64,000 bases of DNA, from NCBI RefSeq assembly GCF_003704095.1, contig NW_020844755.1:124001-188000 (forward strand), given 5' to 3'. Below the pieces are notes generated by a model, which saw only the letters and a list, made by a program, of their open reading frames with translations, did not search any database and was not told where the DNA came from. This DNA comes from Pocillopora damicornis (lineage: Eukaryota). Below are positions 35,786 to 62,029 of the stretch, piece by piece; the first letter of the stretch is position 1, and every line of letters begins with the position of its first letter. Made by a program: the position numbers and the translations under genes.

Positions 35786-38700
35786 TTACATCCTGAAAAT
35801 AGAAAGAATAGAAAAGATATTCGTCGATAAGTTAAAATTCTTAACTTTAATTTATCCAACAAACAAACGCATAGTGAAAATAATTTTGGAATGATTTTAT
35901 ATGTTAGAGGAGTTAAGAAAAAGAGAACGAAATTTAGAGGTAAGAGGCTATAAGGAGGTCCGTACTATAAGTCAAAGACTGAGTTTTTTTCTACTCTGAT
36001 TTATGGTGCGAACTGCGCGGGCCTCAATGCCGAGCGCAAAAAAAAAAAAAAACAAGCTCCCTAATTTATAGTATGGACAGAGAGAATGAAGTCAGTAAGA
36101 CATTAATTATAAAGAAGGGGAAATTATTTTTTATTCCAACGATCGACCGTTTCTTATCGTTTCTGCTCAGATGATTGGTCGATAAATATTTACTTCTTAA
36201 TTTTAACAAAAAGGGATTTATTTACTTATTTGGTTCAGTTCTGAACGAGAAAAAATTGAGAAAGATAGTCCACCATACGGGTCTTAAGAAAATGTGGATT
36301 TACCTTTGAGACAAATCGGCCATTTCTAATAGTGTTCTCTAAACTTTCCCGAACTAAATCTCAGAAGTACACGTGATTAGTTATCTGTTCGAAGCTGATA
36401 AATGCAATGAATAACCGCAGGAAAGAATTTCGAAAAGCTCACGTTATTCTTCCATGCAGAGCAAAGTAGAGAACTGTGGGTCGGGTACGTACGTTTATAT
36501 CTGTTGATATTGTGGAACTGCACCATCGGAGCAAGCAGAAATAAATAAATTAAAAGTTAAGATGACAAGTATTCGTTAAATTCACCGGAGCAAAGTCGAT
36601 AAGTAATATAAAAGTTTGTTTAGGTTCTCTAAGCGGAGGGAAGATCGGCAATCAGAATGCACAATGCAATACATTGCATTGAAACGCATCTTAGTTCTAT
36701 GTACTTACTTTAATTGATAAACATAATTAGTCAGAACACCGCCAATACCATCTTTACAATTGCTATCTTCCGCTACTTCGTAGGTATTGTAAGCCTCCCC
36801 TAATGTTTTGTCCGTCCAGCACTCGCCATTGTTTTGCAAAGCAAAGTATTCGATCATCTTGTCACGTGCGACGTATGCACATTGCAGGATTGTATACCCG
36901 GGATCGTCATCATTTCGTTGAGCCACGAAGGTCGCAAATTTATCTTTGAGAAGCCTCTTAGAGCCTTTGTTCTCCTTGAAACAGCCAATTGCATTAGGCG
37001 TTGGCTTTGACTCTGGAAAAAAAAAATGGGAAGTTGATAGTCTCTGTTGTGCCAGTTTTCATTCGTCATTAACTAAGGAGCATTTCAGCTTAAGAAGTGT
37101 TCTAGAGGAAAGTGATTTTAGAGGGCAGGCCGCTATCATCCTAGCTGCAATTCACCACTTTTATAATTTTAATTTTTGTCATCTTAACAACATAATATAT
37201 AGATTTAGCCAAGCCTAAAAGCGGAGCTTGCATTTTTTGCCAGGTACTCTTTTATAATTATGGGGCTACGCTCTGTGAGCTCCGCTATTACAACTGGACC
37301 AGACTTGCGTCTCCTTCAACCTTTCCCGACGGTAACCCAGAGCCAATGTTATAGCCAAGTAATACCGAGGGTCAATGAAGAAACATATGTCACAAGCTAG
37401 CTACTCAGATTGTTGTGTTATTCATTCGCTTTCACTTTAAACTCACCAAATGTATACACTTGGATGGAAAATTTTATTCCTATACCATTCTTGCAATCTT
37501 TGGCAGCAGCGGGCCCTTTCGCGTAGTAATTGTTTTTAGCAGTGCTACTGGACAAGCACTTTCCCTTATCGCCCAGTGCGAAATGGCTGTAACCTTTATC
37601 AAATGCAAGCTCTGCACACTCCAGAATGTAACTATTGAAGTTTGCTGGATCATAGTCTTTGTTAGGATATGCAAGAACTTCTTTAAAACCAGTCTTCGGT
37701 ATCTTGAAACAGCCAATATTATTGAAAGATGGTACTAGGATAAAAACAAAACGAACGTGAAGCGAAAAGGCTGTTCTTTTTTACATATGTTCACTAAAAC
37801 AGATTTAAATTACTCAACAAGTCGCTAAATTGTATGTTATGTTTGAGAGACTTAGGGCGAGGTGGCTAGCTTTATAGCTTTAAGACATTTTAATTTTCTC
37901 TCACTGATAACTTCTAAACTGTGCTCACCACTAACTAATTTAACTAGCTGCACATTTAACAGTTCCTTTTTTGCCTTTTAAGTCAAAGTATTTAATGTCA
38001 AAGTACGATTTTTCAGGACTGGAATGGAGTATTGGAAAAGTGATGGGGGGAGGGGTGGAGAATTGGGGATTTTGGAGATGCAGAAAAAAATATGGCTTGT
38101 ATTTCTAAGGAGGAAAACCGCTTTTTTTCTCTTTATGCACCTTTTTTGTTGTCTTTTTTCCCCATTTTTCTAGTAGTCTGTCCCTCGTATTTTCTCAGAT
38201 CTTTCAGCGAACGCTCTCTAGACAGGTTGACATCGTTGGAGAATTTTTACCTTACAGTATAGATCTATGTAGTATGAACTGCCCTTTTTTCTACCATGTA
38301 CAGAGAAAGACGTCAAATGGATAAATGCTTTATTACATACACTTTTCAAGTATTTTGTTTCGATCACTAACCTTGACAATTGACTCCACTAAAGTCGCCT
38401 GTGCAATCACAGTGGTATTCTGTGATGTCTTCTTTATCGTTACGGCAAGCTGCTCCATTTACACATGGATCGCTATCACACGGATAGGACTGAACTGAAA
38501 TCATCAAAACATAGCAACATGTTGGAATCTCTCGTAGCTTAAACCCCTTGAATAATGCTCGGTGAACCGATCACAATGAAAAGTCTCTTCTTTGATTGAC
38601 ACTAACCTTCACAATTCTTCCCACTGAACATTTGCTGACATTCACACGAGTACTGCATAGGATCATCTTTTTCCACCACACAAAATCCATTGTTCTGACA

Positions 38701-41700
38701 AGGATCATCATCACAACCAGTTGGATATGAATACGAGGCTNNNNNNNNNNNNNNNNNNNNNNNNNNNNNNNNNNNNNNNNNNNNNNNNNNNNNNNNNNNN
38801 NNNNNNNNNNNNNNNNNNNNNNNNNNNNNNNNNNNNNNNNAGGCGGATATACAGACCGTCAGACAGAAGATCAAAATTAACGAATAAAAGATAGTCAAAT
38901 CAAAAGAAAATTAAAAAAGACAGGTACTGATGAGGTTTCATCCACCTAAGTATTTAGTACAAGCACCAGAACCAAATAAGCCTTTGCTTGAACGATAAGA
39001 CTCAAGGAAAGCTTTCTGTCTCGTTTTCCAAACTTACATGTAATGAAAACTTATTCGTGGGTGTTTGGCTGCATAGTAAGAACCGTCCATAAATTAGACT
39101 CATGTAACACAAGAAGGAAACAGCGTGGCTGCAAAGTATTTTCAAAGGCACCTTTGATTACGGCCCACATTCGATTTCAACTCACCAAATGTATAAACAT
39201 CAACTGTAGATTTACTTCCTATGCCGTCTTTACAATCCTTGGGACTAGTGCCTCCTTTCAAGTGGTATTCGTTGTTAGCAGTTGCACTGGATAAACAGCT
39301 TCCTTTGTCACCCAAGGCAAAGTATTTGTAACCTTTCTGGGATGCCAACTCGCTACATTCTTTGACATAAGCTTTTGATTTCGCTTTTGCTGGATCAAAG
39401 TCCTTGAAATGACTCGCAAGTACTTTCTTCAAACCAGAATTTGGTTTCTTAAAACAACCAACTTCAATGAATGATGACACTAGAATTCAAAAGGAAAGTG
39501 CACGTATTAACATTGACAGGCGGCTATGCTCATCTCCTCTGGTCAAATGGCGCGACTGTCTAATCACAATGAGCTTAACATTTTACAGTTCGTTATCGTC
39601 CACAAAANNNNNNNNNNNNNNNNNNNNNNNNNNNNNNNNNNNNNNNNNNNNNNNNNNNNNNNNNNNNNNNNNNNNNNNNNNNNNNNNNNNNNNNNNNNNN
39701 NNNNNNNNNNNNNNNNNNNNNNNNNNNNNNNNNNNNNNNNNNNNNNNNNNNNNNNNNNNNNNNNNNNNNNNNNNNNNNNNNNNNNNNNNNNNNNNNNNNN
39801 NNNNNNNNNNNNNNNNNNNNNNNNNNNNNNNNNNNNNNNNNNNNNNNNNNNNNNNNNNNNNNNNNNNNNNNNNNNNNNNNNNNNNNNNNNNNNNNNNNNN
39901 NNNNNNNNNNNNNNNNNNNNNNNNNNNNNNNNNNNNNNNNNNNNNNNNNNNNNNNNNNNNNNNNNNNNNNNNNNNNNNNNNNNNNNNNNNNNNNNNNNNN
40001 NNNNNNNNNNNNNNNNNNNNNNNNNNNNNNNNNNGAGAGTAACCTTCACAATTCTTCCCACTGAACATTTGCTGACATTCACACGAGTACTGTTTAGGAT
40101 CATCCTCGTCCACCACACAAAACCCAGTGTTCTGACAAGGATCATCATCACAACCAGTTGGATATGAATACGAGGCTTGAATACGATACACAAAGTTTGC
40201 CATCTCTTTGCCAACTCCACCTGCACAATTGTCGGACCTTCCGTACTTGTTATATATGTTAGCGATGTCTTTACTAGTCCAACATTGGACTTGATCCAGC
40301 ACAGCGAAATACTGATAACCCATGTCTCGAGCTAGAGTAGAGCAGTAAACAACAGTGGCCTTTGGATCCGAGTTACTAGGGAGGCTGGCAAAATTATCAG
40401 TAAGCAACTTCTCTGTCTTCTCTTTTTCCACAAAACAGCCTTGTGGAACAGATTTAGGGGCCTGATCTGGTTAAAGAGAAAATAGTTTTGACGATTAGAA
40501 TCACGTTTGTGTCATCGAAAGGGACATATTTGAAGGTAGAGTAGTCTTCTTAGCAACGTAACCTCAGTTTGCAAATAAAATTTTGCACAAGTATTTCGGT
40601 CTCTCGAAATACTAAAGAGGTTCTTTGAAAAAAAAAATAGAATTTTTATTTGAATAAAAAAGATTGAAATTACAAGATTTTGTCTTTCAAAACTCCTTCA
40701 TATTTTATTTACGTTTTCAAAGGTGATATTTTGTGTACCAGTCATCAATGGACTGATTGTTGAGGACGTAGAAAGGGTGGGAAGAGCCTCCACAGTCGTT
40801 ATCATTCTTGCACTGTGGCTGTAGTTTGTGTTTGCGTCCTACTCACCAAAGGTATACACGTCGACTGCCATTTTACTCCCTATGCCATCCTTACAGCTAC
40901 TAGGACTGGTTCCTCCTTTTTCAAAGTATTCTTTATCGGCGGTTTTACTCGAAAGGCAGTTTCCTTGATTGCCCAGTGCAAAATGGCTGTAACCTTTGTC
41001 GAATGCCAGTTCGGCGCATTCATATATGTAAGTTTTTACTTTCTTTGAATCAAATCCCTTCGGAGATGTAAGTACCTCCTTAAGACCGGACTTTGGTGCT
41101 TTGAAACAGCCAATTTCAGCAAAAGAAGGAACTAAGAATTACAAAAACCAACAATCTATCAATATCGGAATACGTATGTGCAAATTAATGTTGAAGCAAA
41201 AAGAATAAAGACAGCGGGAACTGACTTTTCTCTCTTTCAAGATCTATAATTGCAGTCCATCTCACACAACAATGTGGACGTCATATCTACTTACATAGAT
41301 ACTAACATGCAAACACTTTATTGAGCATCCCTGATGAGGTTTTTTTTCGATGATACGTCCAAAATTATTCATTTACGTTCAGAAAGCCTCATGGAATACC
41401 TCTGTAATTAATTGCAAGTTATTCGAATCACTTGTCCTATTACCTTGACAATTGACTCCACTAAAGTCGTCCGTACAATCGCAGTGGTATTTTGTGATAT
41501 CTTTTTCGTCGTTGCGGCAAGCTGCCCCGTTCTTACAAGGTTGGCTATCACATGCATAAGACCGCACTAGGAAATAATTTAAAATTAGTAAAGATGAAAA
41601 CTTTCCAATAGAAGTTTGTACATAAACATAGTTAATAACTGATAGTAGATCAACCATATCTCGTTTAAATCACACCAACCTTCGCAGTTCTTTCCACTGA

Positions 41701-44700
41701 ACATTTCCTTACATTCACATGAGTACTGCATAGGATCATTGTTGTCCACCACACAAAACCCATCGTTTTGACAAGGATCATCATCACAACCAGTTGGATA
41801 TGAATACGAGGGTTGAATACGATACACAAAGTTTGCCATCTCTTTGCCAACTCCACCTGCACAATTGTCGGACTTTCCGTACTTGCTGTATGTATTAGCG
41901 ATGTCTTTACTGGTCCAGCATTGTACCTCGTTTTGTACAGCGAAGTACTCGTAGCCCATGTCTCGAGCCAGAGTAGAACAGTACAAAATAGTGGCTTTGG
42001 GGTCAGAGTTACTTGAGAAGCTGGCGTAATTGTCAGTCAGTAACTTCTCTGATTTCCCTTTTTCTATGAAGCATCCCTCAGGGACAGATTTCGGTAAAGG
42101 TTCTGAGAATGAAATCGATACAATTGTTCATTGGAATCATATTCCTTTTTCAGAGTAGACGTTAAAAATTTGTCGAACATGTGCAAATCCTTTCGTTGTG
42201 AAGCGACACGGGATGGCTAACGAATATCACTTTTACTTCCAATGATTACCGCAGAACACATCCACCGCGATAGGTTTGAGCGTCCATTATTTCGATTCCG
42301 TCGTAGTCTTCTCTATTCTTAACCTCTGTACATAATTTTAGTCCATTCTAGCCCTTCCAGTTTGTCAGTACCTCCAAAAATTTGGGAAAGATTTCAGCTT
42401 TTTTCAAAAAGCAGGTTTTAGTCAAATAAACCGACTCAAATTGTTTGAGTTGTATCGAATGTCTATTAAAGTTAGAATCTTCGAATCTCTTCGAATTTTA
42501 CTCACCAAAAGTATATACATGGACTGAAGATTTGCTTCCAATGTCATCCTTACAGTCACTGGCTTTGGTACCCCCTTTCTGGAAGTATTCGTTCTGAGCA
42601 GTTCCACTCGACAAACAAATTGCACGATCTCCGAGGGCAAAGTGACTGTAACCTTTGTCAAATGCAAGTTCGCCACACTCATAAATATACGATTTAATTT
42701 TTTCTGGATCGAAGTCTTGGTTGTGATTTGCCAGTACGCTTTTTAGACCAGTTTTCGGCGTCTTGAAACAACCAATCTCAGAGAAAGGAGAAGCTACGAA
42801 AATAATTAAATGCACGAGCGAATAAATGAATTTAAAAATAAAGGAAAACATAGATCGATAAATTAAACGACAAGAAGATACCAATCTCTACTATATAAAA
42901 TCGTCACACTGGTAAAAAGTTATAAAAACATCACGATAGCTTAGCGAAACAGTGTTTACATTGAATGATTTATTCTGCGACTGAAACAGGCAGACTCGCA
43001 GAAAAAGAATTCCGAGTGCTCGTACCGAAGACCTTCCGATTAGCACTTCGGATGCTCCTTCACTGAGCTATAGGAGAGTGGCAGACTAGGCCGTTTAACG
43101 AGGTCCAGAGTGACAAACCTCTTGTATACTGCTGGGATAGGAATGTTGAATGTGATGCATTTGCGCAATAATGCAAATGAAGGTGGTAAATATTAAGCCT
43201 GGTGATGTAAACCAAAGATGTTGTATTCAGCGAATGACACAGACATACTCGAAGAAAAGAACTACGAGTGCTCCTAATAAGATTGTTTACATTCTGCCAC
43301 TCTGTCGCCTGGAAATCTTCTAAGATCTTACGCGTATATGTAGATTAGCGGTCCCGAAGCCCTCTAGAAGCATGTGAGATAAAGATTTGCAGGAATCCGC
43401 TCAATCGAGAGGATGGCTTAGATTTGCCACACGAGTATATGACTTTGGCACCAGAGGAAAAGACTTAATTAATAACAACTGTTCAAATTTTACATTTCTC
43501 TCTATATTTTGTGCTTTTTAAATTCCTCTTTTTCACTTTCCCCTGATGAGGGCTGGAGTTTCTTAGCCGAAGCGTTGGGATTCTAAAATCATTTTTTTAA
43601 TACTTTTAGAAATTTTTACTCGTATAACGATTTAATATAGTTATGAAGCCACATGATCATAACTCTATTTTTAATATCAATTTTTTTTCATTTATTTTTA
43701 TCTTCATTATTTTCCTATACTAAAATGAAAGGTATGATGATCATTCTAAAACCAGCTCTGACTCAAACAATCTCTACTCTGTAACCCATGACATAATTTT
43801 CTTCCACCCGGGGTGTCAGGTTTTTTGTTTTCTCCGACGACGCTAGAAAGGGTTGTGAAATATGTGTACACTTTTTCCCTAGCCTTTAAGCAGGTCCTCA
43901 CTAATTACTACCGCTTCGGCAAGAGGGTTTCTTCGCCCAGGAAGACATGAACCTGCAACTCGAGCCGCTGAGAATCTCAAGAGGTCAGGCAATGATAACT
44001 TGTGTCGGCACCCCTGCAAGCCTCTCTCTGATTAGTCTCGAATGTTACGGCGGGCGGAGAAACGCGCGTTCTTCGAGGCTGATGAGAGCTTTCTCGCATG
44101 TTTATTTTTCCCTAACCGAGAATGACGCCGACGATTGAGGTTACAGGACTATCAATTAACAGAATCGTACAAGCAAACATAATTTTAGTGACGAATGCCA
44201 ACTTTACAACCTTTTTTTCACAAAACGTCTAAGAGTTGAGATTATAACTTCGCGAGAACTAACTGCTCACCCTTCCAAATCTCTAAAATGGATGGAACGG
44301 CTTAAATACGCAAAAAACCGCTCAGCGTGTTACGTATGCTAAGACGTGGACATTTTTATTACCTTGACATTTTTTCCCAAAGAAACCAGACAGGCAGTCA
44401 CAGTGGTATTCGGATATGTCTGTCTCATCATTCCTACAGGCTGCTCCATTTAGGCAGGGCTTGGAGTCACATGGAAATATTTGAACTGAAAGGAAAATGT
44501 GCTGTTATAGTTATGCTGAGGTTTCTGTTAGTATAAAGGAAGTAAGTTTGTTAATAAATTGTGGTGCTGTGGGTAGGGTGTATCACAAAATAACTTGGTT
44601 TCATCAACTGACTTGATAATGACCGCAAAGAGTTTCGGAGGCTAACGTTTCGAGCGTTAGCCTTACGGCAGAGCGAATTGCGAATGCTCGAGCCGTCAGC

Positions 44701-53700: not shown

Positions 53701-56700
53701 CTCACAGATTCTCCAATGCCCAATTGAATCTCCCTGGCATTCTTTCCCTCCATTTGAAGGCCTTTTCATTCAAGATCAGCAAAAGAGGAAGAAGGAAAAA
53801 AGATCGCTTAACTTGTGCTCACGCACGGACACACTTACAAGATTAAAGCCGAACTTATTTGCACTTTATGCATTAGAATTGTCATTTGATCTTATGAGAA
53901 ACCAGCGGATCTGTGAAATGGACGAGCTCGATGCAAAGTTGCTTTCTAATGCAAAATCTCCACACAGCCAGAGTTGGTGGAGGCAAGGAATCTCGAGGTG
54001 AAATGAAATCATCGTTGGGGAAGAGATCTCACGATTTCAAATGCAATCCCTACCTGAATTAATTATTCATTATAATTATTGATGATTCTCTCACTCACGG
54101 TGGATTTGTGCATGATCTTGTCCTGTGTTGTACCCCACCACCGCATGTTCTCGTGCATGGAGTAAAGTCCGACCATTCGCTCCACCAGCCATCGACCTGG
54201 GGCCGACCGTTGTCAACGCACACTCCTTTGATGCACCACTATAAGAAATTAGATACAAGCACAAATTATGTTCGGTCCCAAGAGAATTATAACTTTGTAC
54301 GAACAGAAAAGCTGACGAGAAAACTTGAACCCCTCCAGCGAGTTCGACCTTGGATGACCTTGCGAGGTCATCCAAGCGCGTTCATCAACATGATTTGAGC
54401 ATAAGATGAGGGAAGTGCTCAGCATTGCTTTAGATCAAACTTACACGCCGAACGTTACGGTTACAATGAATCCTACAGAGAACAGTGATAGCACATAGTT
54501 CGTCTACAACTTGTTTAAACAGAGAATCTTTGTTCAAAATGGAAAAAAAAATTAAAAAGGCATCATCTCATTTTATGGAAGTCAACTAGTTCTAGCTTAA
54601 AGATATCAGGAGTGTTTTGAAGTGACTTCAAAGGAACGCAATGAAACATGTTCTTAAAGCCAGGAGTTTAGCATTGGAAAAGTTCTCTTTGGAGTTTTGC
54701 TTATCACTTCTGGCTGGTCTTAGAATAACGGAGTCCTATGGCGAACTGCAGCAGGGTTTGAACATTTGACTAATAATGACATACATTTCTACTTCCACAG
54801 GGAGTCCCGTCGAGAGCGGGAGCTGCACGTGTATCACACCAATATCCGTTCGGAGTACACCACAGTTTACCACACTCTGCCTGCAAAATGAGCAAGCATC
54901 GCAAGCGACATTAGACACCTTTACAAAATGTTAAAGCAGCGCCTTTTTACAAAGGTTTTATTCAGTTATCTGGAAACTATTTAAAATTCAGCCAATCTGA
55001 CTACATAATTTTATAAGCTGTTTATATTTTTCCATATCTTTCTTGAATAAATTTAGTAATCAGAAAGTGTATTTCCGAACAACTTCCTTTTTTCGCTCGC
55101 AATAAAAACCGATTAATTATAAACGGATTCATAAGAAATAGATGAATGAAATAATAGTTTACAAATATATACACAACTAAATGCATATTGTTTTCTTCGA
55201 CATGATATTTTTAGGAACATAAATGTTATTTTTTACATTGCTTTCAATTGGTAATTAAAAAAGAAAAAAATATCAAAATGAAGACAAACACTGATTAGAC
55301 ATTTGAATCAAAGGTTGGTTTTTTTAGATGGGAATCTCTTACCGCAAATCGAGAACATTGTCGAAAACCAAGTCCATACTGTAAGACGCACTGATCATCG
55401 CCATTCATGATTTCACCAGGAAGTTTTAATACAAAATTATTCGCGTAAAGCTCGCTAGGATCAATTGTCTCTTTTATATCGCGTGCTACCCTGATACTGA
55501 CTTCTCGTTTGTCGGGATCACCTTCATCAATCTTTTCATACACCACAGTCCTTTCGCCGTCCTCAGCCTCTTCGTTCAAACAATTTGACTTGCTACTTCT
55601 GCAAAACACATTTCATGGACAAAGTTAAAAGTCAAATAAATTTGCAAAAGCTTTCTGAATCGCTATAAAACGTGATTCTCCACACAACAAAAACGAGGTC
55701 ATCCAAACGTGTCCATCAACGAGATTTGAGCGTAAGATGAAAGTAACGAAGGCTATTTTTAGTTATGATTTACGTGACTTTCAACACCCTTTTGTTTTGT
55801 GTGACATTCTTTCGAATTGTCAGCATTATGTCTCATTCCGTCAGGTCACGAGACACGTGTTAGTCGCAAGCATAGCCAGATCGAAGGATTGTCGAAATAC
55901 TAGAATAATAGAACGGGGAAAGAGGTATGTCATCTTGTTTATTTTTGTATTTATATACCGAAACGTGTATAATCAAAGGTAGTTTTGTTTCGTTTAGGAT
56001 ATTTGTGTTGTTTGATTTATCTATATACACGCCCCGCGTGTTCGAGTTTAGGACATTCGATTAGCGTATATTGTATGGTAATGGCCTATTTTAGTTTATT
56101 ATATTTCAGTTTTTATGAGCTTTCGAGTTTGATAAACCAACTGAGATTTGATAGACGCTGGGAGGTTCCGTTAATATAAAACATTTCTCTGACGCGGCGT
56201 TGTTCAAGTTTGATTCGATGTATATCAGCGTCCGCCCCGTTACAATGAGGGAATTATATTGCCCACGTTGAGCTGAGATCTGATAGAAATATTTGAAGTG
56301 ACTTCGAGCAAACAGCAGTTTCGATAAATAACTGGTGTATTTTAAGTTCCGCTCAATTTCCGTTATTTTTAGCGTAGTTAAGATAATGATAGACCTCGTT
56401 TAACTCTACAGTATCTTAGCAGATATTCTTTTTACCATTGTCGTCACATTAAACGCTAGTTCATTAAAACCATCTGTTGTGCATTATTAAACAATGTCAA
56501 CCTATGAGTACCCAAGGATTTCCAGTTTGGAAATCACCCCACAAGTTGGGTTAATATCTACCTGAGAAGTTCTTGAATGACTCTCATACTGCAGTTGGAC
56601 CATGTCTCAGCTTTGGAGCCTCCAGGGAGCACCGCGGACATGATGTATGTGTTAGAAGGACACTCGTCTGTTTCATCATGATCCACCCCCATGCTAGAGA

Positions 56701-59700
56701 CAACAATATTTATTCACCGACTTTCATTTTATTCTTGACTGGTGTTAGTCAAAAGTAGACTAACATAAAAGAACGAAATTAAAGAAGGCCTTTTTTGGGG
56801 AGTTGGTCTCTGAAGTTATGCTCTCTCCCCAAACACAGGACATGATGATCATTGGTGCTACACTTATCTGACGATAGAGCTCGATTGAAATATCTTGAAA
56901 TATATTGCTAGCAGAATACAAACTTAGAAGACAGACAAAATTTGGTTCACTTCAGGAAGCTTGCTTTCGAGTTTACGAAATTTAAAGAAAACTAAAAATT
57001 TTTTAAGCTGTTTAAGAAAAGGTCGTTATTAACAGCGTAAAAACCCACTTCAAATGCTGGAGGAACACTCGGAAAACTTGTAAACCCCTCGCTTTCGGCT
57101 CGTAACTGACAAACTTCCATGAATACATTACGCAAAGACAATCAGCTTTTGTTTGTTACGCGAGGTTCTCAAAAGGGTGATAGCCCTTACGGCTAACGCT
57201 TAACATTTTGGCAATTTTCCGGTTCATTTATTTCCGATGCGATTAATTTTTAAATTAAAAAGCTAAAAAAAATCGGGTTAGTTATTTTATGACTTAAGGT
57301 TAAAATTTGTCAAAACTACAGTTAAATTATTTTTCCGTTTTACGGCTAATGGTTTACCCCAGTAAGACCCTCTAAAACTAAACTAAACTAAATTCGACAG
57401 TTCTACAGTTTTCTGTTCTTGATAATTTGAAAAAGAGACATGGCTCTGTCAGGGAACAGTGGTATTTAGGTGAGTATGTCCTTCGGTTACTTAAACTGCA
57501 TTGAAAATAAGCCTTACTTGTGACCAGTTTCATGAGTCACTATCAGAGCTGTTTGTAAGCCCACCATGTTGTTTACGTTTTCTGTCGCTCTGCCGTTACA
57601 TATGGTCTTGAACGGAGCCAATCCTGGTTTATTAAGAACAAGTACAAACCAAACTGTGTTAATGGACGCGCTAACAGAGATAGTCCACCCACGTTAAGGT
57701 GAGCAGCAGGGTTTGCGAAGCGAAATTTAAAATGGCAAACACCAAGGTCGAATTTTAAGACAACTTTCAAACGGTGCTGTCACTCTTTGGAATCTCAAAA
57801 TACGGTCAGTGGTAAAGTTTTTATATTTACTCTCCTATGTGGCTGGTAATTCGTATGATTTTTTGGAGCAAACGCCTCCTCCACGCGAGCTGTATCCCTA
57901 CACAAATGGAGATCATATCGATCGATCAAGTGCTTATAAGAACAGGGTAATTAAGTATTATCAAATGAGTTGATAACATAAACTGGCCACCGTAAAGAGT
58001 TTCAAAGCTGACGTTTCGAGCGTCGGCGAGTCCTATGTTTCACTCTGACGAAAGGCTAACGCTCGAAACGTCAGCTTTGAAACTCTTTACGGTGGCCAGT
58101 TTGCGTTATCAACTCAGGTGATAATACTAGGTTACCCTGCTATACTCTCCCAACGACGCAGCTCCACAGTTTCTTTAGAAAGTTATCTCCTTTATAAATT
58201 TGGATTATGATCAAAATTGGGTAAAATCGATCTCTTAATGAGCCCAGCAAGCCGATCGGTGAGGATTTACGTGTACATTACCAGGAATATCGAAATATAA
58301 CCTATATATGTAACTTATAAGAGTTGCATTGTACTTACCACCAAGTCCTGATTCCATGCTGAATAATAAAGAAGTATAAGTGATAAGTATTATTTTTAGC
58401 ATCTTTGTTATTACACTATTACGTCATCTTACCATATTAGGGCGTGAAAACACGTAAAATATGTGATAATAGCCTAATGTGGAAAAGACAAAAATACGGA
58501 CGGAAAGTAGAGTAACAAAATGTCTGCAGTAAACAATTCAGACTTGGATTTTTTGCCGTTTGTTTAGCTTATTGTTTTCAGCATCGAACTTCAAGCGCAA
58601 GCAAGCATGAATTGATTTAAGCATAAATGAATTAAGCGACTCACTAACTTGCTGATGGACAGACAGAGAGAGTTTTTAAGATGTGCACCTTGCTTTGTAC
58701 ACCGTTTACTTTGCTTTACCTGTACACAAGGGAAAACACATCTTCCCTGCCAGTCTGGTGGGATTTTATATATTTAGCAAACTTCGACAGCCATTGAGTT
58801 TTAGATTCTGAGAACTCCGCACCGAACACCTGAAGAAGACAGAGATGTAACATTTAAACGGCACCGAATGCAATTTTAGAGCTGATTTTTTTATTTCTTG
58901 ATAATTCATGCGAGTCTAGAGTATGGTTTCAGTTTCCAAAGTTCGCTTTGTTAATGAAACGAGTTGTTCTTTGGTCACATACTTTCACTCATTTGTTGGT
59001 CTTTTTCTGGTTGTTAGTAAAATTTCTTTAATTCAAAGTCTGCTATTTTGGTTTACCTTCTTGTCGATAACGATGATTCGCGTAACTTTGTAATAAATAC
59101 GGATCTCTCCAATGCTCGGGTCCATGAAGAGTCCTGAAATCTTGAAAAGAGAAACCCGAATGAAATTCGCAGAATCTTTTCAAAAAGCGTATGGACCTGT
59201 CAATGCATTCTTTCCTCACTCAACATTTTCATTCACATCCACTTCTTGTTGCATTATATTGACGAGAGAATGCTTCACATTTTAATATTTACAGCAAAAG
59301 GTTAATTATTGTCAAATTTTATTTCAAGAGTTAAGCAGGCTCGACGGAAGTCAATGTCTTTCTTTCTCCTAGATAATGGGTGGGTAAAGAAATAAAAATT
59401 CTGGTTTCAACCAGTAAATAACAAGTTCAAAATTCAAACAGAAGGAAAGTATAGAATGTAAATTAAAACTAGGAATTTATTTGTCGAGGGTGCGGAACAA
59501 AGACACTTCTGTGAGTTCCCAATGATGATTCAAGTACGAGTCACTCCTTACAATGTTTGTATGTGGTAGCAAGCGATTTTCACAACTTCAAGATATGTAG
59601 GAGGTGTTTATCAAATCAAAGTTTACAAAAAGATGTTAAATCTAGAACTTACTGTATTTCCTAATAAAAGGAGAAACTCCTTTGGGTCGTGCTTTTCAGT

Positions 59701-62029
59701 CTCCAATGTTGCCGCCGAAGCCGCCTCGAGCATTAAAGCAGCCTCCATAGTTTTTATCGTCAAATTTCCTTTATCTTGTACCTCCAGGCTGTCCGGTATC
59801 TTCCTTCGTGGTTTAAACACTGTAAAGGTAGATGAAGTCAAATATGGAAACTTGTTTCGTTAACATTGCTTAACTTCTCTTTCAGCTTTTTTCCTAAGAA
59901 GTGGTTGTCTAACTTGATTTCGTTGTTGAAAAACCTTTAACTTCTCAAAACTTTAACATTAACATACCTAACCACTCAAAGCTACACAGGTTACCACTTG
60001 AAGAAAGGCAGTTTTTTTGCAGATTTTCAAAAAGGGAGCTGTGGCCTGTTTCTATGAATTTAAGTTAACTACTGGTCCCGGCTGATTTTCTTGTTTACAT
60101 TTATGATCGAGCTGTTGATGGCCTTGACAGTATAACAGTAAAGATACCAGGAAATGAGAGTCTTTGCTGGCCTTGGAGATAAAACTGGCACTATCATTAC
60201 TTGAATTAATATTTTGTTTTAAAAAATAGGTTATCGTCTCTTGGATTCTTACAAAGTGTAAAGGAATGTTAATAGATACCATACAGTGTAATACCTTTCC
60301 TCATATCATGCGGATCAAATTCAACTGGAAGAGACCTCTTGTAAATCAAATGAGGTGTCTTAACTTCACTCGACGCAGCCCGCTTTGCAAGATGGGTCGG
60401 TAACGGGTGAATGAATAAGGTATCGCTGGCTAGTTTCAGCATACCAGTCTAAAATAAGAATGGAATGGAAATTAGAACAAACGGTCTAAACGCAGCCCAA
60501 CAAAGACACATAAAACATGGCATTTTCTGTCAATAAGTAGCCCAACTGAGTTGACCAATTTCACTTTTCCTCTAGGTTCCATTATATATCAGATAAATGT
60601 CTTCTGATATTATCGTCATATTCCCTGTGTAACTGCATAATCATCAAATGAATTTTTTTTAAAAACAAGTTTCATTTATGCGTATCGTATAAAGATCTAA
60701 CTATAGAAATGGCTCGTTGTTTCTGCTAGGGTTCAACTGATTAAGTTACTAAGCTCCATTTGCACATGGATAATATTTGAAATCCTACCCGTTAAACTTT
60801 TTCTTTCTATTTTGTCGCCAGCTATCGAGCTTATCTAGTACACTTCTGTTTCGAAAACTGAGACAAACATTTTACATTAATTTACCAGCCCTCCGTTGTC
60901 ACTAACAGCCACCATTGAATCGGGATCGGACATCACGTTACCAAGGTAGTAATTGTTTGGGGGTGGGGGAGAGTATGATATCGTGCCATCAGCGTATATC
61001 GTCTCCGCAACGAGGTCAGGAGACATCAGCTTTTTGTTCAATGTTAAGTTCAAGTGCAATTCCCGCCCAAATGCCTTGACTTTGTAAAATATGTTTTCAC
61101 GTGATTCCTCTGCCCGCCGTTGACGCCGTTTGAAATTTTCGTTGAGTTGATAAGGGGTGGTTACATCGTACTCGGGAACTACAGCGAAAGAGAAATATAA
61201 TAGGTAGCTTCAGTTGAACAGTTACAAGTGTAAAACCACCTTTTCCCTGCTCTTAAAAAGTGGACAGTTATGGAAACTTTGAATAACATATAAAAGATGC
61301 CATTACCAATAGTAACCAATCAACGGAAGCAGTAGGATATGGTCTTCAGTTTTATGGATGTTTATCAAATACCTAAATACTACGAACGCCCTGATTAGTC
61401 AGAAAACCTATCCTTCCCTTGTGCCGTTAAACCTCATAAAAATTGAGGTTCATTTGATAAAAGCAATAGACCACACTTTCTATTGGATGACTGGCCTAAT
61501 AACCCCCTCAACTAGATGAACTCTAGAAAAGTTGATAAATTCTACGCCTCCAGCTTGAGAAATTTTCTCAAGTTCGTCCATCATCCCACTTAGGTTATTG
61601 GTAAATGATGAAAATGTTTTCTATTGCTTAAGTTACCTTCTGAATGATTATCAACACCGAAAAAGTACTTCAGATCATTTTCTGTCATATGATGGTGAAG
61701 CGTCTGCGGTGAGAACAGTTATTAAAAAATAAAAATAACATATGAACAAAACTATCACAAAAACATGGGTATATAGATATCATCCGTCTGACACCTTCAA
61801 CATGCGAATGAGATCAACTATAAAACTAATGATTCATCGACTTACATTTCGGTGCGTCGTTCGTGCAAAAGCTGTTGATCGAAAAGAAATCAAATTGACC
61901 ATTTACATTAATACTTTGTAACGGAAAAAGTGAGATCTGTGATCATTAGAGCCTCAACAGTGTCTTACCTCCGGAGAGAAACACAATCATAAGAACTGGA
62001 AACGCCAACAGCGGATGATACCAGCCCAT
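35786..62029 (-). CDS. ADAMTS-type secreted zinc metalloprotease with a C-terminal EGF / WSC-like repeat array (~2,300 aa if the gap-hidden exons match their sister repeats)
   Basis: Signal peptide 61969-62029, 61846-61871. Prodomain 61637-61703, 60886-61178 ([10 protein letters not shown]), 60295-60448 (HLIYKRS). Catalytic domain 59653-59819, 59057-59140, 58720-58829, 58339-58358, 57518-57623, 56562-56693 (HETGHNMGVDHD, Met-turn YIMS). Disintegrin-like 55343-55598, 54785-54880. TSP1 54099-54238, 53695-53761. Cys-rich 53183-53267, 52743-52864, 52138-52261. Spacer 51943-52032, 51544-51704. Three TSP1 in 51131-51266, 50445-50571, 49643-49862, 49178-49340. Seven EGF exons 48604-48723, 48010-48141, 47341-47463, 46956-47078, 45879-46001, 45091-45213, 44363-44485. 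Repeat units 42506-42793, 41680-42102, 41444-41566, 40847-41131, 40044-40466, (gap), 39186-39479, 38607-38740 (partial), 38372-38494, 37447-37734, 36709-37012. Last exon 35786-35792 (K-M-stop). A probable non-coding exon ends at 62500. Confidence 0.85.
38741..38840. other. Assembly gap (100 N) hiding most of the third B-domain exon
   Basis: N run; the flanking sequence matches the 3' part of the sister exons. Confidence 0.95.
39608..40034. other. Assembly gap (427 N), probably hiding one 123-nt EGF exon
   Basis: N run at the position where the other repeat units have their second EGF exon. Confidence 0.9.
43539..43580 (+). ncRNA. Type I hammerhead-like motif of a second family (GAAG variant)
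   Basis: tccc-CTGATGA-G-GGCTG(gagtttct)TAGCC-GAAG-CG-TT-ggga. Stem I is TCCC/GGGA (4 bp) and stem II is 5 bp; A15.1 is replaced by G. Confidence 0.5.
44555..44755. mobile_element. Degenerate copy of the Penelope-like palindromic element
   Basis: ttgtggtgctg..tcaactgacttgataa..gctaacgtttcgagcgttagccttacggcagagcgaat. The hammerhead core on the minus strand is mutated to CTGCCGT. Confidence 0.5.
46128..46605 (+). mobile_element. Internally deleted non-LTR retrotransposon (CR1/L2-like): RT fragment plus 3' end
   Basis: 46128-46346 reads [60 protein letters not shown], typical of the LINE RT N-terminal region. It is followed by a 14-bp hairpin (46496-46538), AATAAA and a (TATTG)n tail. Confidence 0.8.
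52589..52688. other. Assembly gap (100 N), intronic
   Basis: The flanking exons join in phase (GASCK|AAGCD), so no missing exon is required. Confidence 0.9.
57945..58190. mobile_element. Palindromic Penelope-like element with ~75-bp inverted arms
   Basis: Left arm gtattatcaaatgagttgataacataaactggccaccgtaaagagtttcaaagctgacgtttcgagcgt pairs with right arm acgctcgaaacgtcagctttgaaactctttacggtggccagtttgcgttatcaactcaggtgataatac. The head is reverse-complemented at 58140-58190. Confidence 0.7.
58042..58076 (+). ncRNA. Minimal type I hammerhead ribozyme motif
   Basis: CTGACGA (58045-58051), AAGGCTAACGCTC, GAAA (58065-58068), CG, TC, AGCT. The palindromic ACGT stem III is typical of dimer-forming Penelope hammerheads. 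Confidence 0.6.

What the first reader, a model, noticed from the sequence alone, without database searches (positions are those of the whole stretch)
35786..62029. ADAMTS protease fused to a Notch-like EGF array and eight WSC-like domains
Seen: a complete ADAMTS core (signal, pro, M12B with HETGHNMGVDHD, disintegrin-like, TSP1, Cys-rich, spacer, 3 TSP1) continues by phase-1 splicing into 7 EGF, then [A-B-EGF-EGF]x3, then A-B. There is no stop codon, TM segment or new signal peptide in between. Established: characterised bilaterian ADAMTS tails use TSP1, PLAC, CUB, GON-1 or mucin modules, not EGF arrays. Inference: a lineage-specific secreted protease with a long multivalent, possibly glycan-binding arm, acting on mesoglea, mucus, skeletal matrix or microbial/symbiont surfaces.
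Basis: partly seen in the sequence, partly recalled or inferred. Interest (0 to 1): 0.85.

Follow-up and report, generated by a model that had tools for sequence, protein, structure and literature searches.

The report
Coral ADAMTS protease with EGF/WSC arm
One real, expressed Pocillopora coral gene encodes a secreted ADAMTS zinc protease that carries a long tail of EGF and WSC-fold modules; related corals have the same design in public databases under wrong names such as "Notch", and no paper found here describes it.

Summary
On the minus strand, ATG 62029 to stop 36705, at least 41 exons encode signal peptide, propeptide, M12B catalytic domain (HETGHNMGVDHD, split over two exons), disintegrin-like, TSP1, Cys-rich, spacer and 3 TSP1. 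The frame then continues by phase-1 exons into 7 EGF and A-B-EGF-EGF cassettes, ending in A-B.

- **Conservation:** Intronless cDNA contigs of other corals carry the whole architecture in one ORF.
- **Gaps:** 52589-52688 is intronic. 39608-40034 probably hides one EGF exon. 38741-38840 cuts the B3 exon. So 7 of 8 WSC-like domains and 12 of 13 EGFs are visible.
- **Fold:** A and B are homologous 4-Cys domains whose models match only WSC structures.
- **Family:** A C-terminal B or A-B is common in anthozoan ADAMTS. EGF arrays were found only in Orbicella, Oculina, Stylophora and Pocillopora.

These proteins are in public proteomes, misnamed "Notch" or "ADAMTS6-like". The scan had already found the paralogue on the same contig. 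Glycan binding is inference.

The parts
61969..62029 (-). Exon 1: ATG at 62029 and the signal peptide; donor is phase 1
   Evidence: Aligns to the N-termini of the Stylophora and Oculina orthologues. It is the only strongly hydrophobic 19-mer in the model. Splice context.
61846..61871 (-). 26-nt microexon (phase 1 to 0) linking the signal exon to the propeptide
   Evidence: AG..GTAAGT context and the match to the Stylophora model. It is needed for frame continuity.
60295..61703 (-). Propeptide exons 61703-61637, 61178-60886 and 60448-60295
   Evidence: Pep_M12B_propep, E 1e-14. Orthologue alignments are 64-100% identical. Junctions.
56562..59819 (-). M12B catalytic domain in six exons: 59819-59653, 59140-59057, 58829-58720, a 20-nt microexon 58358-58339, 57623-57518 and 56693-56562. 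The zinc motif HETGH|NMGVDHD is split at 57518/56693 and is followed by a Met-turn (YIMS).
   Evidence: By single exon only Reprolysin_3 hits, weakly. The orthologue cDNA gives Reprolysin at 44 bits against a cut-off of 20.8.
54785..55598 (-). Disintegrin-like domain, exons 55598-55343 and 54880-54785
   Evidence: ADAMTS_CR_2 hits on both exons; junctions.
53695..54238 (-). Central TSP1 repeat, exons 54238-54099 and 53761-53695
   Evidence: TSP_1, E 4.9e-8; 89% identical to Oculina.
52138..53267 (-). Cys-rich domain, exons 53267-53183, 52864-52743 and 52261-52138
   Evidence: ADAMTS_CR_3 weak hit; orthologue alignment; junctions.
52589..52688 (.). Assembly gap inside the intron 52742-52262; no coding sequence is expected in it
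   Evidence: Donor 52743 and acceptor 52261 are both phase 0. Orthologue cDNA is continuous across this join.
51131..52032 (-). Spacer exons 52032-51943, 51704-51544 and 51266-51131. The last also starts TSP1-2 and ends in a GC-AG intron donor.
   Evidence: tblastn to the orthologues; ADAMTS_spacer1 at 36 bits in the orthologue cDNA; splice contexts.
49181..50571 (-). C-terminal TSP1 repeats 2-4, exons 50571-50445, 49862-49643 and 49340-49181
   Evidence: TSP1_ADAMTS hits. RNA joints 49340/49643 and 50445/49862.
49863..50444 (-). 582-nt intron that some RNA contigs of three runs leave unspliced. Read-through meets TAA at 50443-50441, directly after TSP1-2.
   Evidence: Contig pieces 49833-50299 and 49643-50299 (table 8); stop position.
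48724..49180 (-). Intron joining the ADAMTS core to the EGF array (GT..AG, phase 1)
   Evidence: RNA contigs of X2, X6 and X14 (three studies) skip exactly 48724-49180. No contig covers 48900-49099.
44363..48723 (-). Seven single-EGF exons, all phase 1-1: 48723-48604, 48141-48010, 47463-47341, 47078-46956, 46001-45879, 45213-45091 and 44485-44363
   Evidence: Pfam EGF/EGF_2 hits on all seven, five at or above the curated cut-off. RNA joints link all seven. Each has 6 Cys and none has a Ca-binding consensus. Among these seven, three carry C-x-S-x-P-C and three carry C-x4-[ST]-C.
42506..42793 (-). A1, a WSC-fold 4-Cys domain
   Evidence: The RNA loose end at 44363 reads the start of this exon. 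Alignment A2. Model pLDDT 83.4 and WSC structures as top hits.
41680..42102 (-). B1 (WSC-fold) plus EGF8 in one exon
   Evidence: WSC at 27.6 bits (cut-off 27.8) and EGF. Model pLDDT 83.7; top hits are Wsc1, glyoxal oxidase and Kremen.
41444..41566 (-). EGF9
   Evidence: Pfam EGF, E 5.7e-7.
40847..41131 (-). A2
   Evidence: WSC, E 6.5e-3; alignment A2.
40044..40466 (-). B2 plus EGF10; the donor lies 10 nt before the gap
   Evidence: WSC, E 5.8e-5, and EGF; donor context.
39608..40034 (.). Assembly gap where one EGF exon (EGF11) is expected
   Evidence: The Stylophora orthologue has an EGF between B2-EGF and A3. No EGF is readable at 39480-39607. The frame is kept either way because the flanking exons are phase 1.
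39186..39479 (-). A3
   Evidence: WSC, E 6.8e-4; alignment A2.
38741..38840 (.). Assembly gap that removes the WSC core of B3
   Evidence: No B-like reading in 38841-39185. The Stylophora orthologue has a full B-EGF at this position.
38607..38740 (-). Readable 3' part of the B3 exon: linker plus EGF12
   Evidence: 84% identical to the matching part of B1-EGF8.
38372..38494 (-). EGF13
   Evidence: Six-Cys EGF reading with a C-x-S-x-P-C site, phase 1-1 splice sites and 90% identity to the matching EGF of the Stylophora orthologue. This exon was not put through Pfam.
37447..37734 (-). A4
   Evidence: Alignment A2; weak WSC hit.
36705..37012 (-). B4 and the stop codon TAA (36707-36705). The protein ends directly after B, as in the orthologues.
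   Evidence: WSC, E 2.6e-5. The orthologue ORFs end at the same point. Context.
35786..36704 (-). Presumed 3' UTR, with AATAAA/ATTAAA signals at 36222, 36135 and 35851
   Evidence: No RNA was laid here, so the true end is not shown.

Best explanation
**What it is (shown).** This is one gene of a Pocillopora-type coral. It encodes a secreted multidomain ADAMTS zinc metalloprotease of about 2,300 residues.
- The N-terminal half is a complete ADAMTS core with an intact HExxHxxGxxHD zinc site and Met-turn.
- In place of the PLAC, CUB or GON-1 tails of bilaterian ADAMTS, the C-terminal half has seven non-calcium-binding EGF repeats, then three cassettes of A-B-EGF-EGF, then a final A-B.
- A and B are two diverged, homologous 4-cysteine domains with the WSC (PAN/apple-like) fold.

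**How it arose (supported by tree and comparison).**
- Anthozoan ADAMTS form one clade whose members usually end in B or A-B.
- One A-B-tipped ancestor gained an EGF array made of symmetrical phase-1 exons.
- That gene duplicated into two paralogues, both on this contig.
- In the Stylophora/Pocillopora line the A-B-EGF-EGF cassette was tripled. Orbicella and Oculina have one cassette.

**How it works (inferred).** The core cuts extracellular matrix proteins. The long rigid arm, probably O-glycosylated, acts as a multivalent exosite that holds the enzyme on a repetitive, probably glycan-rich extracellular substrate.

**A possible second form (seen at contig level only).** A partly retained intron after TSP1-2 puts a stop at once. 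If translated, this would give an arm-less protease from the same gene.
For: - **Domains:** exon-by-exon Pfam scans.
- **Frame:** continuity from ATG to 40044 and an integer codon count to the stop. No internal stop, transmembrane segment or second signal peptide.
- **RNA in this species:** RNA-run contigs from three studies (X2, X6, X14) splice 49181 to 48723 with GT..AG and chain the TSP1 exons, EGF1-7 and the start of A1. One 4,989-nt contig holds the TSP1 exons (and, by its length, probably most of the upstream core), the EGF array and sequence beyond it.
- **cDNA in other corals:** intronless contigs L007 (1,748-aa ORF) and L011 (2,240-aa ORF) carry propeptide, Reprolysin, ADAMTS_CR_2, TSP1, spacer, EGF and A/B in one ORF.
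- **Colinearity:** genomic contig L002 of a related species has spacer, TSP1s, EGF1-7, A and B-EGF in the same order.
- **Cassette number:** the Stylophora orthologue PFX24446.1, 80-98% identical per exon, shows three cassettes plus A-B.
- **A/B fold:** A and B are homologous (hhalign 98.6%, E 5e-16). AF2 models reach pLDDT 83-84, and their only convincing PDB matches are WSC domains of yeast Wsc1, a fungal glyoxal oxidase and Kremen.
- **Tree:** on the ADAMTS core, the two EGF-bearing types are sisters (SH-aLRT 98), nested beside the A-B-tipped coral ADAMTS (94), inside an anthozoan clade (100).
- **Tails in relatives:** architectures of 45 relatives.
- **Retained intron:**
Against: - No biochemical evidence for protease activity or ligand binding.
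- The catalytic domain lacks a cysteine loop found in other ADAMTS; a 20-nt microexon stands in its place.
- No canonical R-x-K/R-R furin site was seen at the pro/catalytic border.
- WSC hits stay just below Pfam's cut-off. The domains have 4 of the usual 8 cysteines. Profiles of A and B find no PDB sequence.
- RNA support comes from assembled contigs, not reads. It covers only 44300-50299, so nothing shows the A2-to-B4 exons in one molecule in this species.
- Two gaps hide part of the arm.
- Contig depth cannot quantify the retained-intron form.
Confidence: 0.8

Rival explanations
1. There are two neighbouring genes, an ordinary ADAMTS and a separate EGF/WSC matrix protein. Only read-through or mis-assembled transcripts join them.
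For: All arm exons are phase 1-1, so any in-frame join would look plausible. RNA evidence comes from assembled contigs, which can bridge genes (caveat). An ATG-led hydrophobic ORF exists in the joining intron at 49051.
Against: The join is a precise GT..AG splice found in three studies. No contig covers 48900-49099, where that ORF lies. The same continuous ORF is present in cDNA contigs and gene models of four other coral genera. Simpler anthozoan ADAMTS already end in A-B. A-type domains occur almost only in ADAMTS genes in this genome.
Confidence: 0.03
2. The architecture is as described, but the arm is a protein-protein interaction or matrix-assembly scaffold rather than a glycan binder. 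Examples would be binding a matrix protein or receptor as Kremen's WSC does, or forming fibrils as EGF arrays do.
For: Kremen's WSC domain, among the structural matches, works in a protein complex (established knowledge). The domains keep only 4 of 8 WSC cysteines and fall below the Pfam cut-off, so canonical function need not be kept. EGF arrays usually mediate protein contacts.
Against: Fungal WSC domains, including that of an alcohol oxidase related to the glyoxal oxidase hit, are reported to bind polysaccharides (own knowledge, not checked here). Multivalent repetition suits low-affinity glycan binding. Neither point is a test.
Confidence: 0.35
3. The protein is a catalytically dead, ADAMTS-like matrix component. 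The protease fold is kept only as a structural or binding module.
For: The catalytic domain is diverged. Single exons barely hit Reprolysin models. A cysteine loop is replaced by a Gly/Ser microexon. No clear furin site was seen.
Against: All three zinc histidines, the catalytic Glu, the Asp after the third His and a Met-turn are present. They are conserved in the Stylophora and Oculina orthologues. The propeptide is kept. True ADAMTS-like proteins lack both the propeptide and the catalytic domain (established knowledge).
Confidence: 0.1
4. The number of A-B-EGF-EGF cassettes in this assembly is an artefact. Near-identical repeats were collapsed or duplicated around the two gaps, and the true gene has more or fewer than three.
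For: Both gaps sit inside the repeat region. B1 and B2 are 83% identical, which invites assembly errors.
Against: The Stylophora orthologue, from an independent assembly, has exactly three cassettes plus A-B, with one-to-one best matches to A1/B1, A2/B2, A3 and A4/B4. A1-A4 are only 63-67% identical to each other, so they are distinct copies.
Confidence: 0.12

Closest known systems
Anthozoan WSC-tipped ADAMTS, in databases as 'ADAMTS18', 'ADAMTS18-like', 'ADAMTS6-like' or 'ADAMTS7' (Nematostella XP_048588216/7 and XP_048584029, Orbicella XP_020607143; also Acropora, Porites, Montipora, Desmophyllum and Actinia models)
   Same: Same ADAMTS core and same clade on the core tree. Same C-terminal B or A-B WSC-fold module ending the protein.
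   Different: They have no EGF repeats and only one B, B-B or A-B, and are about 1,000-1,200 aa. The window's gene has 13 expected EGFs and four A-B pairs.
Direct orthologues and the paralogue group in other corals: Stylophora PFX24446.1 ('Neurogenic locus Notch protein'), Orbicella XP_020601515/17 ('ADAMTS20-like/6-like'), Oculina XP_078380346 ('ADAMTS6-like'). Paralogue type: Orbicella LOC110040616 ('notch homolog 1-like') and Pocillopora damicornis RMX48625.1.
   Same: ADAMTS core plus an EGF array plus A-B cassettes in one ORF. Stylophora has the same three cassettes.
   Different: Orbicella and Oculina orthologues have one cassette. The paralogue type has four EGFs per cassette and 3-5 cassettes. 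The Stylophora model skips several exons and reads two in a wrong frame.
Vertebrate ADAMTS6/10, and ADAMTS9/20
   Same: Closest bilaterian relatives of the core by sequence, about 25-30% identity over the whole core. Same order of propeptide, catalytic, disintegrin-like, TSP1, Cys-rich, spacer and TSP1 repeats.
   Different: Their tails are TSP1 repeats with PLAC or GON-1 (PF08686, PF08685). None in the list carries EGF or WSC.
WSC domains of known structure: yeast Wsc1 sensor domain (7pz2), Fusarium glyoxal oxidase (9n3u), human Kremen1 (5fws)
   Same: Same fold by Foldseek: TM about 0.52-0.64, and they are the only matches with probability above 0.5.
   Different: 13-19% identity, four instead of eight cysteines, below the Pfam cut-off, and no hit by sequence profile against PDB.
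Hydra zinc-metalloprotease proteins with TSR, WSC and MAM domains (PMC4820225)
   Same: Cnidarian secreted metalloproteases that combine TSP1 repeats with a WSC domain.
   Different: The paper describes them only as having a 'zinc-dependent metalloprotease domain' with MAM. It reports no ADAMTS ancillary domains and no EGF array. Their sequences were not compared here.
Notch receptors
   Same: Tandem EGF repeats, several with the O-glucose (C-x-S-x-P-C) and O-fucose (C-x4-S/T-C) consensus.
   Different: No LNR, transmembrane or ankyrin parts. The EGFs lack the calcium-binding consensus. The database name 'Notch' is a misnomer.

Membership tests
ADAMTS (MEROPS M12B, with thrombospondin motifs) | Signal peptide and reprolysin-type propeptide | tested here: met
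   Signal exon; Pep_M12B_propep at 55 bits against a cut-off of 23.7.
ADAMTS (MEROPS M12B, with thrombospondin motifs) | Catalytic domain with HExxHxxGxxHD and a Met-turn | tested here: met
   The motif is read across the 57518/56693 splice and is followed by YIMS. Reprolysin reaches 44 bits in the orthologue cDNA. Single exons of the window give only weak hits.
ADAMTS (MEROPS M12B, with thrombospondin motifs) | Disintegrin-like, central TSP1, Cys-rich and spacer domains in that order, with no transmembrane segment | tested here: met
   ADAMTS_CR_2, TSP_1 and ADAMTS_CR_3 by exon. The spacer is shown by alignment and by ADAMTS_spacer1 in the orthologue. No transmembrane segment.
ADAMTS (MEROPS M12B, with thrombospondin motifs) | Proteolytic activity | not testable with these tools
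   Needs recombinant enzyme.
WSC domain (Pfam PF01822) | Score at or above Pfam's gathering cut-off (27.8 bits) | tested here: not met
   The best exon is B1 at 27.6 bits. The others score 13-25 bits, and A1 has no hit. A more distant Nematostella ADAMTS tail reaches 40.8 bits.
WSC domain (Pfam PF01822) | Eight conserved cysteines | tested here: not met
   Four invariant cysteines in A and four in B. The canonical count of eight is from own knowledge.
WSC domain (Pfam PF01822) | WSC (PAN/apple-like) fold | tested here: met
   AF2 models with pLDDT 83-84. The seven top Foldseek hits for both A and B are Wsc1, a glyoxal oxidase and Kremen, followed by a sharp drop. These are predicted structures only.
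WSC domain (Pfam PF01822) | Carbohydrate binding | not testable with these tools
   Needs glycan arrays or pull-downs.
EGF-like domain | Six-cysteine EGF pattern with a Pfam EGF hit | tested here: met
   All twelve readable EGFs have 6 Cys. Pfam EGF or EGF_2 hits, E 1e-9 to 4e-4, cover the ten EGF exons that were scanned; about eight reach the curated cut-off. EGF12 and EGF13 were not put through Pfam.
Notch receptor (the name given to relatives in databases) | LNR repeats, transmembrane segment and RAM/ankyrin intracellular domain | tested here: not met
   No such Pfam families in the full-length orthologue and paralogue ORFs. No transmembrane segment in the window's exons.

The most novel reading that the evidence does not exclude
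The A-B WSC-fold pair is an anthozoan-specific glycan-binding exosite of ADAMTS proteases. In robust corals it was multiplied on an EGF stalk, giving a multivalent lectin-protease aimed at a polysaccharide-rich target such as the calcifying matrix, mucus or symbiont/microbial cell walls. Retention of the intron after TSP1-2, which gives an immediate stop, lets the same gene switch between an anchored and a free, arm-less protease.
Probability: 0.15. Interest if true: 0.75.

Novelty: new variant of a known kind. Interest (0 to 1): 0.5.

Why it matters
- **New tail type for a well-studied family.** ADAMTS proteases are defined largely by their C-terminal ancillary domains, which set substrate choice. 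This tail type (WSC-fold pairs, here multiplied on an EGF stalk) is absent from the described bilaterian repertoire. It gives a clear case of domain gain by phase-1 exon shuffling and cassette amplification within corals.
- **Database names mislead.** Members are labelled "Neurogenic locus Notch" or "notch homolog 1-like". Omics papers may then read them as Notch signalling. One Pocillopora larval proteome lists a "notch-1 protein" among TSP1-repeat proteins (PMC12960093). That may be this family, but it was not verified.
- **Candidate matrix enzyme.** If the arm binds glycans, these enzymes are candidates for matrix remodelling at the coral tissue-skeleton or tissue-microbe interface.

Tried and rejected
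- **Representative search with the B1-EGF exon.** None of the 149 listed hits that could be fetched combined a zinc site, TSP1 and EGF. The architecture turned up once a full-length cDNA orthologue was used as query.
- **The look-up of encoding contigs on P0194** returned no DNA.
- **Profile searches of A and B against PDB sequences** found nothing at E up to 1.
- **Literature searches** by accession and by ADAMTS/WSC/EGF/coral terms found no description of this architecture. Subscription journals are not covered, so this is weak evidence of absence.
Exons were searched one by one by reference. Frame continuity was checked by exon-length arithmetic and single junction codons only. Natural cDNA orthologues stood in for the full-length protein.
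  - The assembly gaps were not filled. Two near-identical fragments (P0007, P0197; 92-93% to the B-EGF exons) appeared in result lists and may be the missing exon. They were not used for that purpose.
- **Ideas considered and dropped.**
  - That 46115-46345 is a nested exon of this gene. It is a 98% copy of C1396:10783-11013, and the RNA contig holding it is a different transcript.
  - That the GTAAGT overlapping the stop codon marks a further coding exon. The orthologues end at the same residue.
Full report
**Layout and observation**

The feature lies on the minus strand. Stop-to-stop reading of 33-64 kb shows a row of short open segments whose translations are plainly ADAMTS, EGF and WSC-like. 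Exon-by-exon Pfam scans, by reference, gave these hits:
- Pep_M12B_propep (55 bits), a weak Reprolysin_3 hit, and ADAMTS_CR_2 on two exons
- TSP_1, ADAMTS_CR_3 and TSP1_ADAMTS on four exons
- EGF on seven single-domain exons
- WSC at E 3e-6 to 9e-2 on six of the seven readable A and B exons (A1 gave no hit), and EGF again behind B1 and B2

The zinc motif HETGH|NMGVDHD is split by an intron.

**Gene model**

I placed every splice site using the Stylophora and Oculina orthologues as guides, together with GT/AG and phase rules.
- The model starts at ATG 62029.
- It includes a 26-nt microexon (61871-61846).
- It includes a 20-nt microexon (58358-58339), which stands where other ADAMTS have a cysteine loop.
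- It has one GC-AG intron (donor after 51131).
- Exon-length arithmetic keeps a single frame through 36 exons to 40044. With the two expected hidden pieces, the total is exactly 2,323 codons to the TAA at 36707-36705.
- No exon has a stop in its phase. The only strongly hydrophobic stretch is the signal peptide.
- I did not build or search a joined protein.

**The gaps**

- Gap 52589-52688 sits in an intron. The flanking exons (ending 52743, starting 52261; both phase 0) are contiguous in orthologue cDNA.
- Gap 39608-40034 follows the B2-EGF exon by 10 nt. The next readable exon is A3. The cassette pattern and the Stylophora orthologue put one EGF exon there, and none is readable.
- Gap 38741-38840 cuts the B3-EGF exon. 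Only its last 134 nt are readable.
- So seven of eight WSC-like domains and twelve of thirteen EGFs are actually seen. Because all flanking exons are phase 1-1, the frame is kept whatever the number of hidden cassette exons. Continuity there is still not shown in this assembly.

**Is it one transcript?**

- Twenty-two public runs hold part of a 10-kb stretch of the gene. Seventeen of these, two of them on record as RNA, hold about 0.19-0.24 of its words, close to its exon share.
- Contigs of four runs were laid on 44300-50299. Three runs from three studies (X2, X6, X14) gave spliced joints with GT..AG ends at 49340/49643, 49181/48723, and every EGF-to-EGF junction.
- Loose ends at 44363 read the start of A1, and loose ends at 49862 read the end of the preceding TSP1 exon.
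- One 4,989-nt contig spans the TSP1 exons through EGF7 and runs on at both ends: about 2.8 kb upstream, presumably the rest of the ADAMTS core, and 536 nt downstream.
- No contig covers the middle of the joining intron, where the only ATG-led hydrophobic ORF lies.
- Caveat: these are assemblies, not reads, and only this 6-kb stretch could be laid.

**Independent support from other corals**

- A genomic contig of a related species (L002) has spacer, TSP1s, EGF1-7, A and B-EGF in the same order with short introns.
- A JGI contig (L007, 5,931 nt) is intronless and holds a single 1,748-aa ORF. It runs propeptide, Reprolysin, ADAMTS_CR_2, TSP_1, spacer, 3 TSP1_ADAMTS, 7 EGF, A, B-EGF, EGF, A, B, stop, at 41-81% identity to the window's exons.
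- A second contig (L011, 7,002 nt) holds a complete 2,240-aa ORF of a paralogous type.
- Named relatives were found with the L007 ORF as query:
  - Stylophora PFX24446.1, "Neurogenic locus Notch protein". It is the orthologue at 80-98% per exon, with three cassettes plus A-B.
  - Orbicella XP_020601515/17, "ADAMTS20-like/6-like".
  - Oculina XP_078380346, "ADAMTS6-like".
  - Paralogue type: Orbicella LOC110040616, "notch homolog 1-like", and Pocillopora damicornis RMX48625.1.
- RMX48625.1 maps at 94-100% per exon to the plus strand of the same contig, about 32-52 kb beyond the window. The genome is therefore P. damicornis or a very near relative.
- The assembly's size and contig count match my recollection of that assembly. 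This is recollection, not a test.

**What A and B are**

- Each has four invariant cysteines.
- They are homologous to each other (hhalign 98.6%, E 5e-16).
- Sequence profiles find nothing in the PDB.
- AlphaFold2 models from 17-20-row alignments reach pLDDT 83-84.
- For both, the seven best Foldseek PDB matches are the WSC domains of yeast Wsc1, a Fusarium glyoxal oxidase and Kremen. Scores then fall sharply, and for A some PAN domains of HGF follow further down.
- So the fold is WSC. Membership of Pfam's WSC family is not met by score (27.6 against 27.8 at best) or by cysteine count.

**Family context and origin**

- In this genome, the ten A-type matches at E up to 1e-6 are four in this gene, three in the paralogue, two among the ADAMTS genes on contig C3577 and one broken copy. 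B-type/WSC-like domains are common.
- HMMs of A and B run over the collected relatives show that anthozoan ADAMTS from Acropora, Porites, Montipora, Desmophyllum, Oculina, Actinia and Nematostella usually end in B, B-B or A-B. The vertebrate ADAMTS6 and ADAMTS20 included in that scan do not.
- A quick maximum-likelihood tree was built on the first 960 residues, with the tails excluded.
  - All these anthozoan proteins form one clade (SH-aLRT 100).
  - The two EGF-bearing types are sisters (98).
  - Coral A-B-tipped ADAMTS are their sister group (94).
- This fits one gain of the EGF array in an A-B-tipped ancestor, then duplication, then cassette amplification: one cassette in Orbicella and Oculina, three in Stylophora and this genome.
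- EGF-bearing forms were found only in four robust-coral genera. Absence elsewhere is not proven.

**Function**

- Shown:
  - The protein has a secretory signal and propeptide.
  - The zinc site and Met-turn are intact and conserved in the orthologues.
  - There is no membrane anchor.
  - The EGFs lack the calcium-binding consensus.
  - Five readable EGFs carry the O-glucose consensus and three carry the O-fucose consensus.
- Inferred:
  - The protease is active on extracellular matrix.
  - A stiff, glycosylated, multivalent arm holds it on a repetitive ligand.
- Whether that ligand is a glycan or a protein is open.
  - Glycan: fungal WSC domains are reported to bind polysaccharides (my knowledge, unchecked here).
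  - Protein: Kremen's WSC domain works in a protein complex.
- Contigs of three runs also keep the 582-nt intron 50444-49863 unspliced. Read-through meets TAA at once, so an arm-less protease is possible. Contig data cannot tell this apart from unprocessed RNA.

**Novelty**

- No paper found here describes ADAMTS with EGF/WSC tails.
- A Hydra study notes metalloprotease-TSR-WSC-MAM proteins.
- The architecture is, however, already in public predicted proteomes under automatic and partly wrong names.
- This scan had already reached the same reading for the paralogue on this contig.
- I rate it a new variant of a known kind, of moderate interest.

Noticed in passing
window 49863-50444 (minus): This intron alone is present unspliced in RNA contigs of three runs, beside the spliced form. 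Retention gives an in-frame TAA at 50443-50441, right after TSP1-2. That would yield a protease without TSP3/4, EGF and WSC parts.
   Followed up: partly
window 46115-46345: A 231-nt piece inside the EGF4/EGF5 intron lies in a different RNA contig (1.5-2.2 kb) in three runs. It has a 98% identical copy at G000:C1396:10783-11013. It is probably a duplicated exon fragment of another gene and not part of this one.
   Followed up: partly
window 58339-58358 and 61846-61871: Two microexons of 20 and 26 nt. The 20-nt one encodes a Gly/Ser-rich stretch where other ADAMTS have a disulfide loop in the catalytic domain. Earlier notes report similar microexons in the neighbouring ADAMTS genes.
   Followed up: partly
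window 51125-51131: The intron after exon 51266-51131 starts with GCAAGT, so it is a GC-AG intron. The orthologue alignment leaves no GT alternative in frame.
   Followed up: partly
window 36705-36712: The stop codon TAA overlaps a perfect GTAAGT donor. Orthologues end at the same residue, so it is probably unused or belongs to a 3'-UTR intron.
   Followed up: no
G000:C1390 about 191-251 kb and G000:C3577 about 814-886 kb: ADAMTS genes are clustered. Propeptide matches lie at C1390:203590 (-), 213575 (+, the EGF/WSC paralogue) and 250226 (+). Four more lie in tandem on C3577, with A and B exons beside two of them.
   Followed up: partly
Stylophora PFX24446.1 against window 54097-54882: The Stylophora gene model reads the disintegrin-like and central TSP1 exons in a wrong frame and skips EGF1-3 and two TSP1 exons. 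This probably explains its 'Notch' name and the lack of TSP1 Pfam hits.
   Followed up: partly
PMC12960093 (Pocillopora larval proteomics): The paper counts a 'notch-1 protein' among proteins with TSP1 repeats and discusses Notch signalling. True Notch has no TSP1 repeats, so this entry may be a member of this misnamed ADAMTS-EGF-WSC family. The accession was not traced.
   Followed up: no
window 49051 (minus), inside intron 49180-48724: An ATG-led ORF with a hydrophobic start lies here. No RNA contig covers it in any of the four runs laid.
   Followed up: yes
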